From Octopus bimaculoides (taxonomy: Eukaryota), in contig NC_068989.1 in NCBI RefSeq assembly GCF_001194135.2, forward strand, positions 4,429,608 through 4,493,246: a stretch of 63,639 bases of DNA, given 5' to 3'. Both the position numbers and the translations under genes were made by a program. Of the stretch, positions 23,180-56,168 are shown one piece after another. Each line of letters begins with the position of its first letter. The first letter of the stretch is position 1. A model generated the notes under the pieces. The model saw only the letters and a program-made list of their open reading frames with translations, was not told the origin of the DNA and ran no database searches.

Positions 23180-23625
23180 TCAGTCTATTATAGCAGCGAG
23201 CTTTTCGTCTTTTGCAATTATCCATTCGGGTTGCTTCGAGTGTCTGTTTGATTTGCGTATAAAACGTTCGATAGTGTCTTGGGTTCGATGTATCGTCATT
23301 CCAATCAGTTGAACGACGAGCGAAATCCCGAACAGAGAGCCATTGATTAAACCAAATAAATTTAACTTAGACTTTTCGCTTGTAATGTTTGTGAAGAGGT
23401 ATCCAAGGATGATCATCCAGATCGTATTACACATCAAAAATACGAAAGCACTTTTGACGCGCAACTTCCGGAGTTTTTCAGCGATTTCCGACTTTGGTGC
23501 ACCCGTCCTTACCTTTGCACCAATAACGAAATCATGTAGAAACTTCCAGAATTTGTATTCGACTTCATCTTCATGCTTATCAAAGAGGTTAAAGCTATGA
23601 GTGGAAGAATTCATACTTGCGGAAA
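23180..23625 (-). CDS. CHS: CHS terminal exon (EYKFWKFL...EKLRKLRVKSAFVFLMCNTIW...; stop TGA)
   Basis: 446 nt, tttatttcag acceptor; the E..FW..L and L..LR.K....F.M.N..W pattern of the CHS C-terminal region; stop at 23182-23180. Confidence 0.92.
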
Positions 23626-26600
23626 CTGAAATAAAAGAAAATAAATAAATAAGTAAATAAAAAAGATATTGTGCAGAAGTGGTCTTTAGAAGTTTCATTT
23701 CCAGCCACATTGTTTTAGGTTCAGTCCCACTGTGTGGCACCTTGAGTACGTGTTTTCTGTTATACTACTAAAGCATTGGGCCGACCAAAAGTCTTGTGAA
23801 TAGATTTGGTAGACTGAAAACGAAAGAAGAACGTTGTGTCTGTGTGTGTGTTCCCACCTCCGCTTGACTACAGATGGTTTGTTAACCTCCCCGTAAAGAA
23901 AAGTCCTGGTGTCAATGTATTCGACTAAGCCTTACAAGGTGGTGCCCCACCATGGCCGCAGTCTAAAAGGTTAAAGAAATTGAAGAAAGAAAAATATAAC
24001 AACTAGAAGAAATGAATTATTTCTTCTATTGTGAGTTGCAGCCATTGGATTGAAGCAAAGCCGCCGAGAGAGAGAGCTTCTTATAGTTTCTGTTTGCCTT
24101 GTGGCAACATCGTAAAGATGAAATGTGAAAGAATAGGAAGGAAGCAAACATGGATTAACTTACTTTTATCCTTCCTTTTCTTCTTTATCTTCTTTTTTCG
24201 ACGTTTACGGATTTGGGGGAAACAAACCAGTTTCGGAACGGAAGCTTTGTTCTGCAAATAAATAAATATATAAATAAAAAGTAAAGCCCGTTTTCTTTTT
24301 ATCTTTTATTTGTTTCAATCATTCGACTGCGGCTATACTGGAGCATTTTTTCAAGGATTTTGTCGAACAGAACAAGTTGATATATTTATTATCGAGTCTT
24401 TGGACGAACCAGAAATCACAGGGACGTTACCAAATCCAGTTGTCACACACAGACGCACACACACTCACACACGCACGCGCACACACACACACACACACAC
24501 ACACAACGAGCTTTCATGAGTTTCCTTCTTTTAAATTCCCTCACAAGTGATTGATCAGTCTGGGGCAAAAAGTAGAAGATACTTGCCCAAGGTGTTACGT
24601 GGTATCAATGAGCTGTTCTAGAGTCAAACGTATTCCAACCGTGACCTCTTAGTCTGTTAAGGGTCGTCTAATATAAGCATCACTGACATTTTCCCTTACT
24701 TTGTTTTTGTTTTATATTTTAAAATGGTAGGATGCAATCTGTAGGGATGTTGGTTACTATTTCTAGCAGGTTGCTTGACTATGTAGAATCTATCGGTGGC
24801 TTCATCTGCATCTCTAGATATTTCTTTTCAGAAGCGTAAAGGCAGCAAGCAGCTGTATTTATAGTCTTAGAAATTATGAAACACAATTCTTCAAGGCCCA
24901 AAGAAAACAATTCTCAAAGTGAATTGTTTTGTATCGAAATGAGACGACTGGATGCGATTGTTTGGTACGGCTGATTGTACTTTCAGCCTGTTTTTGCGAC
25001 AGTACTTTTTGACACTGGAGGCAAATTTATGCACACATCCACGCGCAGAAATATTCACATGCAGAGAGAGGAGGGAAGTGGATCAAGGACATTACACATA
25101 CATGTAAGCTTAATATGATGTTCACGAAGAGAGAGAGAGGAAAGAGAGAAAGAGAGAGAGAGATAAGAGGGAGGGTGGGAGAGAGACGGATTGGACCATT
25201 TGATGTCAAATATGTCAGCTCCACATCAGCGATGCCATAAAGGCAGCGCCCAAAAGGCTGAGCCAAAACGCCTCACCCCCAGCTTGTATTGTCGCATTAT
25301 GTAATATTTAGTGCTCTTTCTCTTGAGTCTAACGGATATTAACTGGTCACTAGAAGTGGCAATGCTGCCAATAAAAGACGTATCACCGAAAATGCATTCT
25401 GAGACTCATGTATACGTATTGAAACGCATGCACCACCCGAGCGTCAAACTAATACGCTTGCTTGTTGTTCATACACGAATGTAACAATGTTGACCCTTTT
25501 TGAAATACAGGTACAACTCATTTTGCTAGCAGAGTAAAATAAGATACAGCAATATGAAATAAGTTTCTTGCTCAAGGACACAACGTAACTGCCGGAATCA
25601 AACTCATGACCTTACATTCTTGAGCCGAATACTTAACCACTTGTCGACTCGACCACACGGAATAGTAGGGTCAGTTGGGCACCGCCTGTGGAAATGACAT
25701 ATTGTACTGCGTGGAAGTCGTGCCGGACGCTCCAATACCAACATTTCAGAGATTTAGAGTGTCAATCTGAGTGTTTGCCGTGTACTCAAAACATGTACTG
25801 AGAGTGATAAAAATCAAACATCCAATCACCATCATGGTATTTGGTGTGATCACTAGTGATGGTGATGTTATGCCTCAATTAATCTTCCCACACGGACTCA
25901 CACAACATGGAGGAAATAGTGCTGCCCTGGAGCAAGAGGGTGGCTGCTGGAAGACCTTATATCTGGCAACAGGACTCCGCACCATGCCACACTAAAACGA
26001 AGACCCAGTCATGACCGTCAATCGATTTCTGCGACCACGTCACCCCTAACATCTGGCCACCTAACTCCCCAGACTGCAACCCCCTTGATTATTATGTGTG
26101 GGGTGCAGTTGGGCGAGAGACCAACAAACCTTCTTGTAACACCAAAGATGAACTGAAGGCAAGGATTTACCAACTTAAACAAGGAGAATGTCCAGAAGGG
26201 TTGCAGGAGATTCTGAAATCTGGAGGCGGTGGTTGAAGCCAACAGTGATTTTATTGAATGTCTTTACTCTTTAGTATATCAAGAAATTTTTATGTAATTT
26301 TGGCAAGTATATGTTAAAGTTAGACGTCAGTGTTATTTCCATTTTTGCGTAATTTAGACGATAATTCATTCACCAGTATATATGCGCGCGCGCGTACGCG
26401 GGCGTGTGTGTGTTTTCACTTTCACCTACCACCGCTTGTTAACCGGTGTTGGTTTCTTTTTGTCCCCGTCTCTTCGGCCATGATAGAATAAATACCAAAT
26501 TTAATAAGTAATAGGGTGGAACTACAAGTAAAACATTTCCAGACTGATGCCCCTGCATGGTAGCAGTACAATGACTGAGATAATTTAAACATTGGTTTGC

Positions 26601-55800: not shown

Positions 55801-56168
55801 CTTTCACGTGGTGCCCTGGAATAGCAATGTTTATAATACGATCTCAAGACGGCTTCGTTGATGGTCGTAAAAATGCCAATATAATTTATACTATTTTGAA
55901 ATTGGTAGTACTTTTTGTTTTAGCCGTTGTTATAACATACTTAAACCGCCTGGACAGCTTCGAAGAATCATTTTCCAGCTTAATGCAAGGTTTCCTTAAT
56001 ATAAACTCAACAAAAACCATCAGCAATGGACTCTTGATTCACCTCTTTGCGGGTTTGTTATCGCATGCGTTCACTTACGTATCAGCACGAATATGCCTTA
56101 CACGTAGTGGTATTTACTTACCAACAATATTCGTCACTCCGATCACAATCTTGATCATAATTTTCGAC
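46876..56168 (+). CDS. CHS: Chitin-synthase-like N-terminal TM domain, partial (exons 46876-46887, 48627-48736, 50264-50390, 51968-52114, 55623->56168 gap; ~314 aa)
   Basis: GT-AG introns with matching phases (0,2,0,0). The product [12 protein letters not shown]...[22 protein letters not shown]...[17 protein letters not shown]...[10 protein letters not shown]...[30 protein letters not shown] resembles the CHS A-domain (W....VPE; LxSxxWW; FxxFACKIxxQxFxxAxPxxLxxP). Family assignment is by recalled pattern, not by alignment. Confidence 0.8.
47865..48590 (+). mobile_element. SINE family C copies (47865-48075, 48445-48590)
   Basis: Same core motif. Confidence 0.8.
48627..48736 (+). CDS. CHS: CHS N-terminal exon (ILFKIIGF...HESKETW)
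   Basis: ttttttccag acceptor, gtatgt donor; 110 nt; TG|G rebuilds Trp with the next exon. Confidence 0.8.
49330..49985 (+). mobile_element. Degenerate RTE-like reverse transcriptase fragment in an intron
   Basis: [17 protein letters not shown] and [14 protein letters not shown] resemble RT motifs FVDFxKAFDS and [13 protein letters not shown]. Confidence 0.7.
50264..50390 (+). CDS. CHS: CHS N-terminal exon ([18 protein letters not shown]...WPSLPSLVS)
   Basis: tctctttacag acceptor, gtatgt donor; 127 nt; VPE motif. Confidence 0.82.
50547..51016. mobile_element. Foldback MITE with ~185-bp imperfect TIRs
   Basis: The left arm tagaatatttaattagggtaatgtgaatttgaagtcttaca... pairs with the right arm; TA-rich ends. 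Confidence 0.8.
51968..52114 (+). CDS. CHS: CHS N-terminal exon ([25 protein letters not shown]...FKQGI)
   Basis: tgttttcag acceptor, gtaagt donor; 147 nt, phase 0/0; hydrophobic TM pattern. Confidence 0.8.
52849..53302. mobile_element. hAT-type MITE carrying an internal 16-bp minisatellite
   Basis: TIR cagtggtccccaacct / aggttgggaaccactg (1 mismatch); 8-bp flanks tcgcagta / ccgtagta (6/8 match). Confidence 0.75.
53320..55080 (-). mobile_element. Degenerate RTE-like LINE (RT plus upstream region)
   Basis: [35 protein letters not shown] and [13 protein letters not shown] fragments across frameshifts. Confidence 0.78.
55623..56168 (+). CDS. CHS: CHS N-terminal multi-TM exon, truncated by an assembly gap
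   Basis: Long pyrimidine tract plus ccag acceptor; 182 open codons with several TM segments running directly into Ns at 56169. Confidence 0.85.

What the first reader, a model, noticed from the sequence alone, without database searches (positions are those of the whole stretch)
23180..56168. Chitin synthase whose N-terminal and catalytic halves lie on opposite strands
Seen: a ~314-aa CHS-like N-terminal TM region is spliced from plus-strand exons (46876-56168), and a ~802-aa catalytic/C-terminal region is spliced from minus-strand exons (37262-23180). The halves do not overlap in protein coordinates. I found no minus-strand N-terminal exons and no plus-strand catalytic exons in the window, and the linker (end of the A-domain plus the TMxHE-type motif) is missing. 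The plus-strand exon is cut exactly at a gap (56169), and there are gaps at 42010, 42794 and 47109. Inference, ranked: (1) a multi-contig block is mis-oriented in the scaffold and hides one gene; (2) a real inversion, either disrupting the gene or requiring opposite-strand trans-splicing as in Drosophila mod(mdg4); (3) two head-to-head paralogs, each only partly visible.
Basis: partly seen in the sequence, partly recalled or inferred. Interest (0 to 1): 0.8.

Follow-up and report, generated by a model that had tools for sequence, protein, structure and literature searches.

The report
Octopus chitin synthase split by mis-scaffolding
The two halves of one ordinary octopus-type chitin synthase gene sit on opposite strands most probably because a 17-kb piece of a draft, gap-rich scaffold was inserted backwards, not because of unusual biology.

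Summary
Five plus-strand exons (46876-56168) encode 314 aa of the N-terminal membrane region. Eight minus-strand exons (37262-23180) encode 802 aa of the catalytic and C-terminal region. All internal junctions are AG/GT. About 124 aa between the halves are missing. In relatives, that missing part is the second half of one large exon, and the window's copy of this exon is cut mid-exon by the gap at 56169. Three gapless Octopus vulgaris paralogs carry both halves on one strand and align collinearly with window 45.4->56.17 kb (+) and then 38.2->22.4 kb (-). The closest relative, in O. sinensis, is broken in the same intron into two partial genes on two contigs. Each matches one window block with the same divergence (86% DNA identity, dS 0.17-0.18, dN/dS 0.5). 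The plus-strand block (38785-56168) is bounded by two gaps of exactly 100 N. Flipping it places the cut exon next to the rest of its intron and restores one gene. The contig ends inside a tract that is 96-99% identical among paralogs, a typical short-read assembly break. Verdict: assembly artefact (~0.8). Partly visible paralogs (~0.1), a real inversion (~0.06) and trans-splicing (~0.01) are not excluded without reads. Low interest.

The parts
46876..46887 (+). Coding exon 0 (ATG; MNFE), followed by donor GTATGT
   Evidence: It matches the start of P0121 and P0005.
48627..48736 (+). Coding exon 0b ([15 protein letters not shown]...KETW)
   Evidence: tblastn of P0121; AG/GT junctions.
50264..50390 (+). 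Coding exon 1 ([13 protein letters not shown]...SLVS)
51968..52114 (+). Coding exon 2 ([10 protein letters not shown]...KQGI)
55623..56168 (+). First 546 nt of exon 3 (182 aa, several TM helices). It is truncated mid-exon by the gap and has no splice donor.
   Evidence: In L001, L002, L004 and L005 the same exon continues for a further ~380 nt as one HSP.
56169..56268 (.). 100-N join. The sequence beyond it (56269-56775) is a dispersed repeat, not the rest of exon 3.
38785..56168 (+). Block C: five contigs joined by gaps of estimated size. It is collinear in one orientation with O. sinensis L004 4175-20849 (upstream region plus exons 0-3a). This is the unit proposed to be inserted backwards.
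   Evidence: 61% of bases aligned, 86.1% identity.
38685..38784 (.). 100-N join between intron 3 of the minus-strand half and the far-upstream end of block C. If block C is flipped, this gap would hold the rest of exon 3 (~372 nt) and the 5' part of intron 3.
36999..38684 (-). This span holds the 3' part of intron 3 (37263-38684) and runs on through exon 4. The intron homology to L003, L001 and L005 reaches w38201. Beyond that lie dispersed repeats up to the contig end at 38684.
36998..37262 (-). Exon 4. It starts in phase 2 and needs 2 nt from the missing end of exon 3 (...SLE-G|LSLSKK).
33938..34688 (-). Exon 5 (variable Ser-rich insert plus ILATDSDM...GACGRTHP...FEYAK)
33385..33540 (-). Exon 6 (DFWMTKSAQNIIGSVMCCPGCFSLYR...)
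31309..31569 (-). Exon 7 (GEDRW ... QRRRW)
29652..29882 (-). Exon 8 (TM helices)
26870..27081 (-). Exon 9 (...DQSWGTRDG)
24164..24251 (-). Exon 10 (basic KRRKKK linker)
23180..23625 (-). Exon 11 (C-terminal TM helices; stop TGA at 23180-23182)

Best explanation
There is one intact, octopus-type chitin synthase gene of about 1,240 aa. It consists of an N-terminal multi-TM region, a GT2 catalytic domain and C-terminal TM helices. Its true layout is all on one strand. In this draft scaffold, the lower-level scaffold 38785-56168 was joined to its neighbours through gaps of unknown size, written as 100 N, and was inserted in the wrong orientation. That piece holds the promoter-side region and exons 0-3a. 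It is possible that neighbouring small contigs are also out of order. The short-read contig carrying exon 3 stops at 56168 because it runs into a tract of exon 3 that is nearly identical among the tandem paralogs. The contig carrying exon 4 stops in repeats inside intron 3. The missing ~372 nt of exon 3 and the 5' part of intron 3 lie in the unsequenced join. What is shown: the exon map, the collinearity with relatives, the positions of the gaps, and the equal divergence and constraint of the two halves. What is inferred: that 100-N gaps are scaffolder joins of unknown size, and that the orientation is a scaffolding error rather than a real rearrangement.
For: (1) Three gapless O. vulgaris paralogs lie on the same strand of one chromosome (L002, L001, L005). 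In each, all exons are on one strand and aa ~81/90-394 are encoded by a single exon 3. (2) Each of these loci aligns at DNA level with window 45.4->56.168 kb (+) and then 38.2->22.4 kb (-). Each loses the window exactly at 56168. (3) The closest relative, in O. sinensis, is broken in the same intron. P0121 is a partial protein that ends at the end of exon 3, 4 kb from its contig end. P0001 is a partial protein that starts at exon 4, 2.9 kb from its contig start. Block C matches L004 over 61% of its bases at 86.1% identity. Block B matches L003 over 81% at 86.3%. The O. vulgaris paralogs cover only 27-53% at 79-83%. (4) The two halves show equal divergence and constraint against O. sinensis: dS 0.182 vs 0.173, dN 0.094 vs 0.090, and dN/dS 0.51 vs 0.52. 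(5) Both halves have open reading frames and only AG/GT junctions. Exon 4 starts in phase 2, so it requires a preceding exon. (6) Block C is bounded by two of the three gaps that are exactly 100 N. The other twelve gaps have assorted lengths. (7) The present B|C junction is not conserved. L004 has no catalytic exon on either strand in the 10 kb upstream of P0121, and L004 1-4174 has no homology to block B. (8) Identity among the paralogs rises to 96-99% starting ~160 bp before the contig end at 56168. The other contig end, at 38684, lies in multi-copy repeats.
Against: There is no read-level, mate-pair, Hi-C or transcript evidence for this species, so orientation is inferred only by comparison with relatives. 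The gene-for-gene ortholog could not be seen in one piece in any assembly, because O. sinensis is broken at the same place. Flipping block C alone does not make the flanks collinear with relatives. w19268-19518 matches DNA upstream of the O. sinensis gene. w19519-20237, w56274-56545 and w58276-59510 match DNA downstream of paralog L001 in the forward orientation. So either several contigs are misplaced, or these anchors are transposon copies, or there are real local rearrangements.
Confidence: 0.8

Rival explanations
1. There are two paralogous chitin synthase genes, each only partly visible. The plus-strand 5' half belongs to one copy and the minus-strand 3' half to another. The missing halves are hidden in the 100-N gaps, collapsed by the assembler, or outside the window. 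The copies could be head-to-head or, after flipping 17372-38684, tandem.
For: Octopus has at least four paralogs of this gene in a cluster, and molluscs have up to ten CS paralogs, some in tandem (PMC3942024). The anchor w19268-19518 lies 3.7 kb downstream of the minus-strand stop codon, and its O. sinensis match lies upstream of P0121, which would fit an intergenic spacer between tandem copies. A 100-N gap can hide any length. Collapse of near-identical copies would produce this kind of tangle.
Against: The sequenced DNA between 37262 and 46875 has no N-terminal exon on the minus strand, and 56269-63639 has no catalytic exon on the plus strand. Exon 3 alone (~920 nt) exceeds every gap of estimated size in that interval. 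In O. vulgaris the copies are on the same strand and roughly 85-130 kb apart, not head-to-head at 13 kb. The O. sinensis contig has no catalytic exon in the 10 kb upstream of P0121, and no catalytic-half protein from that 57-kb contig appeared in the search. Both halves have the same dS and dN/dS against two complementary O. sinensis partial genes. This reading would need the same two-partial-copies coincidence in two species.
Confidence: 0.1
2. A real, lineage-specific inversion with one breakpoint in or just after exon 3 has separated the halves. It leaves a recently inactivated gene.
For: The layout as assembled is literally this. Flank anchors suggest other orientation differences near the locus, which might be real rearrangements.
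Against: Both breakpoints would have to fall inside unsequenced 100-N joins. No junction sequence is present: exon 3a ends at a contig end, not at foreign sequence. Both halves keep open frames, canonical splice sites and dN/dS of about 0.5, so any disruption would have to be very recent. The contig ends are explained by a paralog-identical tract and by repeats.
Confidence: 0.06
3. The inversion is real and the gene still works, because two pre-mRNAs transcribed from opposite strands are trans-spliced, as in Drosophila mod(mdg4).
For: The only support is the apparent opposite-strand layout combined with intact, constrained halves.
Against: The 5' half does not end at a splice donor. It ends mid-exon at a gap, and about 124 codons, including the start of the catalytic domain, are absent. 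No relative has this layout. No transcript data are available.
Confidence: 0.01

Closest known systems
Octopus sinensis LOC118761567 (P0121, partial, 437 aa) plus 'chitin synthase chs-1-like, partial' (P0001, 796 aa)
   Same: These are the closest counterparts of the two window halves. Protein identity is 84% and 82%. DNA identity is 86% through introns and upstream DNA. dS is 0.17-0.18. The exon structure is the same. The gene is broken in the same intron 3 in that assembly.
   Different: In O. sinensis the halves are on two separate contigs, so nothing is said about their orientation. In the window they were joined into one scaffold on opposite strands.
Octopus vulgaris tandem chitin synthase paralogs on OX597822.1 (P0004/L002, P0005/L001, P0122/L005)
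   Same: They have the same domain order and the same exon boundaries. They are collinear with both window blocks. Exon 3 is a single exon spanning the TM region and the start of the catalytic domain.
   Different: They are paralogs, not orthologs (79-83% DNA identity, aligned mostly near exons). They are gapless, with all exons on one strand.
Metazoan chitin synthases (GT2, Pfam Chitin_synth_2), lophotrochozoan expansion (Zakrzewski et al. 2014, PMC3942024)
   Same: The Chitin_synth_2 domain scores above threshold. The EDR, QRRRW and SWGTR motifs are present. TM regions flank the catalytic core. Multiple, partly tandem paralogs occur in molluscs.
   Different: There is no myosin motor, SAM or other accessory domain in the parts seen. 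I did not place the gene in type I or type II. It carries a long Ser-rich variable insert inside the catalytic region (exon 5).
Drosophila mod(mdg4)-type opposite-strand trans-splicing
   Same: The only shared feature is that exons of one protein appear on both strands.
   Different: From my own knowledge, in mod(mdg4) the common exons end at a real donor site, the genomic sequence is continuous, and cDNAs prove the joining. Here the 5' part ends mid-exon at an assembly gap, about 124 codons are missing, and relatives are co-linear.

Membership tests
Chitin synthase (GT2; Pfam PF03142 Chitin_synth_2) | Match to the Chitin_synth_2 / GT2 profile above the curated threshold | tested here: met
   the C-half scores 86.6 bits (cut-off 27) on PF03142 and 53.1 bits on PF13632.
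Chitin synthase (GT2; Pfam PF03142 Chitin_synth_2) | Catalytic and product-binding motifs: acidic donor-binding motif, (G)EDR, Q(R/Q)RRW and SWGTR | tested here: met
   The translation contains ILATDSDM, GEDRWLCTL, QRRRW and DQSWGTRD. The first catalytic motif seen in relatives (CTTMYRE) lies in the missing stretch and could not be checked.
Chitin synthase (GT2; Pfam PF03142 Chitin_synth_2) | N-terminal multi-TM region contiguous with the catalytic domain in one polypeptide | tested here: inconclusive
   This is contiguous in P0002, P0004, P0005 and P0122 and in the gapless loci L001, L002 and L005. In the window itself the two parts are on opposite strands across gaps.
Chitin synthase (GT2; Pfam PF03142 Chitin_synth_2) | Chitin-polymerising activity | not testable with these tools
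   This needs expression and an enzyme assay.
Scaffold orientation error (assembly artefact) | Both ends of the odd-oriented segment coincide with assembly gaps, and there is no junction sequence | tested here: met
   block 38785-56168 is bounded by 100-N runs, and exon 3a runs directly into N.
Scaffold orientation error (assembly artefact) | Reversing the segment restores collinearity with related genomes | tested here: met
   Searches show this for the gene itself. For the outer flanks the result is mixed.
Scaffold orientation error (assembly artefact) | Reads, mate pairs or long reads contradict the assembled orientation | not testable with these tools
   No read data or second assembly of this species was reachable (the P0002 locus is not on record).
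Opposite-strand trans-spliced gene (mod(mdg4) type) | The 5' transcription unit ends at a functional splice donor that can be joined in trans | tested here: not met
   the last plus-strand exon ends at a gap in the middle of what is a single exon in all relatives. There is no GT donor.
Opposite-strand trans-spliced gene (mod(mdg4) type) | A mature mRNA joins exons from both strands | not testable with these tools
   No transcript of this species was found. The best protein hit was 82% identical.

The most novel reading that the evidence does not exclude
The opposite-strand layout is real: a lineage-specific inversion split the gene in or after exon 3, and the enzyme is still made by trans-splicing transcripts from the two strands. 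The intact, equally constrained halves would be the trace of this.
Probability: 0.01. Interest if true: 0.85.

Novelty: not a real feature. Interest (0 to 1): 0.1.

Why it matters
If the layout were real, it would be either a very recent gene-killing inversion or a rare case of opposite-strand trans-splicing in a mollusc. The evidence points to an orientation error in a draft scaffold instead. In practice, gene models from this region will come out as two partial or truncated proteins, and relatives in the databases already show this. Counts of chitin synthase paralogs in octopods drawn from such assemblies will be unreliable. The locus should be re-examined in a long-read assembly before any biological conclusion is drawn.

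Tried and rejected
(1) A single-sequence protein search with the 179-aa exon 3a found nothing. This was a false negative of the word-index search, because an alignment query found P0121 and P0122, and P0002, P0004 and P0005 clearly hold the region. (2) In one search, every exon appeared duplicated and interleaved in O. vulgaris. This was my error: the file L001.fa holds both L001 and L002. Separate databases show two ordinary loci. (3) I looked for one O. vulgaris locus that is the near-identical ortholog of both O. sinensis halves, which would have proved contiguity of the orthologous gene. None of L001, L002 or L005 qualifies (84-88% identity). (4) I looked for an overlap between the intron-3 ends of L004 and L003 and found none. 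(5) I tried to use the flanks to fix the global arrangement. The anchors conflict, and some are dispersed repeats. (6) I tried to fetch the O. bimaculoides paralog locus (P0002) to identify the species. It is not on record. (7) I searched for the missing exon 3b, for N-terminal exons on the minus strand and for catalytic exons on the plus strand at E<=10. None was found.
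Full report
WHAT THE WINDOW IS. The window is 63,639 bases of AT-rich (38% GC) eukaryotic scaffold with 15 runs of N. Twelve gaps have assorted lengths (10 to 999). Three are exactly 100 N: 17272-17371, 38685-38784 and 56169-56268. 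I infer that the assorted lengths are size estimates from a first scaffolding round, and that 100 N marks later joins of unknown size. This inference rests on general knowledge of assembly practice, not on a test. The best protein matches are all to Octopus. The species itself could not be identified. No hit exceeded 84% identity, and the locus of the O. bimaculoides paralog is not on record.

CHECK OF THE OBSERVATION. tblastn of Octopus chitin synthases puts residues 1-270 of P0002 on the plus strand only, and residues 395 to the C-terminus on the minus strand only. With the O. sinensis protein P0121, two further upstream coding exons appear on the plus strand. My spliced model has five plus-strand exons: 46876-46887, 48627-48736, 50264-50390, 51968-52114 and 55623-56168. 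These total 314 aa. It has eight minus-strand exons: 37262-36998, 34688-33938, 33540-33385, 31569-31309, 29882-29652, 27081-26870, 24251-24164 and 23625-23180. These total 802 aa plus a stop. All internal junctions are AG...GT and the frames are open. The one exception is 56168, which runs straight into N. The C-half passes Pfam Chitin_synth_2 (86.6 bits, cut-off 27) and carries TDSD, GEDRW, QRRRW and SWGTRD. The N-half has no Pfam family, but it is joined to the catalytic domain in P0002, P0004, P0005 and P0122. About 124 residues between the halves are absent from both strands, even at E<=10.

WHAT THE MISSING PIECE IS. In three gapless O. vulgaris loci and in O. sinensis, residues ~81/90-394 are encoded by one large exon 3. 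The window's exon at 55623-56168 is the first 546 nt of that exon. It is cut mid-exon by the gap, not at a splice site. Exon 4 at 37262 begins in phase 2, so it needs two bases from the missing end of exon 3.

COMPARISON WITH RELATIVES. The O. vulgaris paralogs L002, L001 and L005 lie at 79.52, 79.65 and 79.80 Mb of chromosome OX597822.1. None is flagged as reversed, whereas L004 is, so they form a same-strand tandem array. Each is gapless, with all exons on one strand and an intron 3 of 1.5, 6.9 and 1.4 kb. At DNA level each aligns with window ~45.4->56.168 kb on the plus strand, then with ~38.2->22.4 kb on the minus strand. Each loses the window exactly at 56168. The closest relative is in O. 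sinensis, and it is itself broken in intron 3. P0121 is annotated as partial, ends ...KSLE at the end of exon 3, and sits 4 kb from the end of contig VCDQ01001764.1. P0001 is annotated as partial, starts ISLSKK at exon 4, and sits 2.9 kb from the start of contig VCDQ01001785.1. Block C (38785-56168) aligns with L004 over 61% of its bases at 86.1% identity, including ~6 kb of upstream intergenic DNA. Block B (21975-38684) aligns with L003 over 81% at 86.3%. The O. vulgaris paralogs cover only 27-53% at 79-83%. Codon-level divergence is the same for both halves: dS 0.182 and 0.173, dN 0.094 and 0.090, dN/dS 0.51 and 0.52. So the two window blocks are the counterparts of the two complementary O. 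sinensis partial genes. They have the same age and are under the same moderate constraint.

THE GAPS. The sequence flanking gaps 47109-47632 and 51303-51367 is collinear with L004 in the same orientation, and no exon is expected inside either gap. Gaps 42010-42149 and 42794-43233 lie in about 3 kb (42001-45007) that L004 lacks between collinear anchors. The two 100-N joins are different. At 38685-38784, the 3' part of intron 3 of the minus-strand half abuts DNA that in O. sinensis lies ~6 kb upstream of the P0121 start. L004 has no catalytic exon on either strand in its 10 kb upstream flank, and its first 4.2 kb has no homology to block B. At 56169-56268, mid-exon sequence abuts a dispersed repeat. 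Neither junction exists in any relative.

WHY THE CONTIGS END THERE. Along exon 3, identity among the O. sinensis and O. vulgaris paralogs rises from 75-90% to 96-99% about 160 bp before the position where the window's contig stops. In the same columns the window is only 88-90% identical to L004. This is the signature of gene conversion among paralogs within a lineage. A tract like this is a repeat for a short-read assembler. The other contig end, at 38684, lies in multi-copy repeats. Intron 3 also breaks the O. sinensis assembly.

BEST EXPLANATION. Block C is bounded by two 100-N joins. Reversing it in place puts the cut end of exon 3 (56168) next to 38684 and gives one gene on the minus strand: exons 0-3a, then a gap holding ~372 nt of exon 3 and part of intron 3, then exons 4-11. 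I put this, or a slightly more complex mis-ordering of several small contigs, at about 0.8.

WHAT DOES NOT FIT. The outer flanks are not made collinear by that single flip. w19268-19518 matches DNA 3.3 kb upstream of the start of L004's homology to block C, in inverted orientation. Directly adjacent, w19519-20237 matches DNA downstream of paralog L001 in forward orientation. So do w56274-56545 and w58276-59510, with consistent spacing. Some of these are certainly dispersed repeats: w56434-56545 also occurs at w33000-33124, in L002 and in L003. The rest are single matches that I could not classify. They may mean that several small contigs are misplaced, that near-identical tandem copies were collapsed, or that real local rearrangements exist. 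This is recorded in notebook entry 3.

RIVALS. Two partly visible paralogs (about 0.1). The family is multi-copy (PMC3942024). However, the sequenced DNA between the halves has no minus-strand N-terminal exon. Exon 3 is larger than any sized gap there. O. vulgaris copies are co-oriented and far apart. The same coincidence would also be needed in O. sinensis. A real inversion (about 0.06) needs both breakpoints inside unsequenced joins and a very recent date, given the open frames and dN/dS of 0.5. Trans-splicing (about 0.01) fails the one feature that could be tested, because the 5' part ends mid-exon rather than at a donor.

COMPARISON WITH WHAT IS KNOWN. The gene is an ordinary member of the molluscan chitin synthase expansion. 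Zakrzewski et al. 2014 (PMC3942024) report up to ten paralogs in molluscs and tandem copies in Lottia. I did not assign it to type I or type II. The opposite-strand layout is best filed as an assembly artefact, so the feature as reported is not real biology.

VERDICT. Interest is low (0.1).

Noticed in passing
Exon 3 of L004 (about 20700-21230), L001 (about 25400-25930), L002 (about 27350-27885) and L005 (about 22450-22980); the window contig end at 56009-56168 enters this tract: The second half of exon 3 (a TM helix plus the start of the catalytic domain) is 96-99% identical among four O. sinensis/O. vulgaris paralogs, while the first half is 75-90% identical. In the same columns the window is only 88-90% identical to L004. 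This looks like a gene-conversion (concerted evolution) tract within the tandem cluster.
   Followed up: partly
window 19268-19518 | 19519-20237: Two single-copy anchors abut exactly at 19518/19519. The left one matches DNA upstream of the O. sinensis gene (L004 881-631, inverted). The right one matches DNA 2.3 kb downstream of O. vulgaris paralog L001 (59335-60431, forward). With w56274-56545 and w58276-59510, the right-hand anchors are collinear with the L001 downstream region if 21975-56168 is removed. No single rearrangement fits all anchors.
   Followed up: partly
L004 21221-25278 and L003 1-2875 (O. sinensis); window 37263-38684: Intron 3 of this gene breaks the assembly in two species. 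The O. sinensis gene is annotated as two 'partial' proteins on two contigs (P0121 and P0001), which together would make a protein of ~1,234 aa.
   Followed up: yes
L004 24570-24725: A ~150-bp degenerate copy of part of exon 3a (63-74% at protein level, 95% at DNA level over 130 bp to L004 20559-20690) sits in intron 3, near the end of the O. sinensis contig.
   Followed up: no
P0002 (O. bimaculoides), P0004, P0005, P0122 (O. vulgaris): Public gene models of this family are truncated or chimeric. P0002 and P0004 read through into an intron after exon 6 or exon 5. P0005 skips exons 6-8. P0122 stops after exon 4, and its exon 5 is called as a separate 257-aa gene (L005 32926-33699).
   Followed up: partly
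window 14862-15254 and 15633-16763: There is a large (ACAA/ACAG)n-based tandem array with 36-40 bp higher-order units, interrupted by gap 15258-15631. It produces spurious ORFs of up to 700 aa in several frames.
   Followed up: yes
window 8485-8988 (+): A 167-aa ORF has two C2H2-type zinc fingers (Pfam zf-C2H2 at threshold, 25.2 bits). It is preceded by a '...ASDRAGWR...' stretch that, from my own knowledge, resembles the C-terminal end of retroelement ORFs. It is probably a transposon remnant.
   Followed up: partly
window 1526-1905, 4189-4385, 12070-12455, 35659-36036, 38339-38533; also 26600-26800, 27555-27840, 28635-29063, 40060-40275, 47860-48083; also 32143-33176 and 56274-56545: Three dispersed repeat families are shared with the O. 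vulgaris and O. sinensis loci. One of them sits at the contig end in intron 3 (38339-38533).
   Followed up: partly
window 42001-45007: About 3 kb, including two gaps and the small contig 42150-42793, has no counterpart in O. sinensis between tightly collinear anchors (L004 7737 -> 7778). It may be an insertion or a misplaced contig.
   Followed up: no
The word-indexed protein search returned nothing for a 179-aa TM-rich query, although database proteins share 76-85% identity with it. The same region given as a 4-sequence alignment found them. A negative result from this tool on membrane segments should not be trusted.
   Followed up: yes
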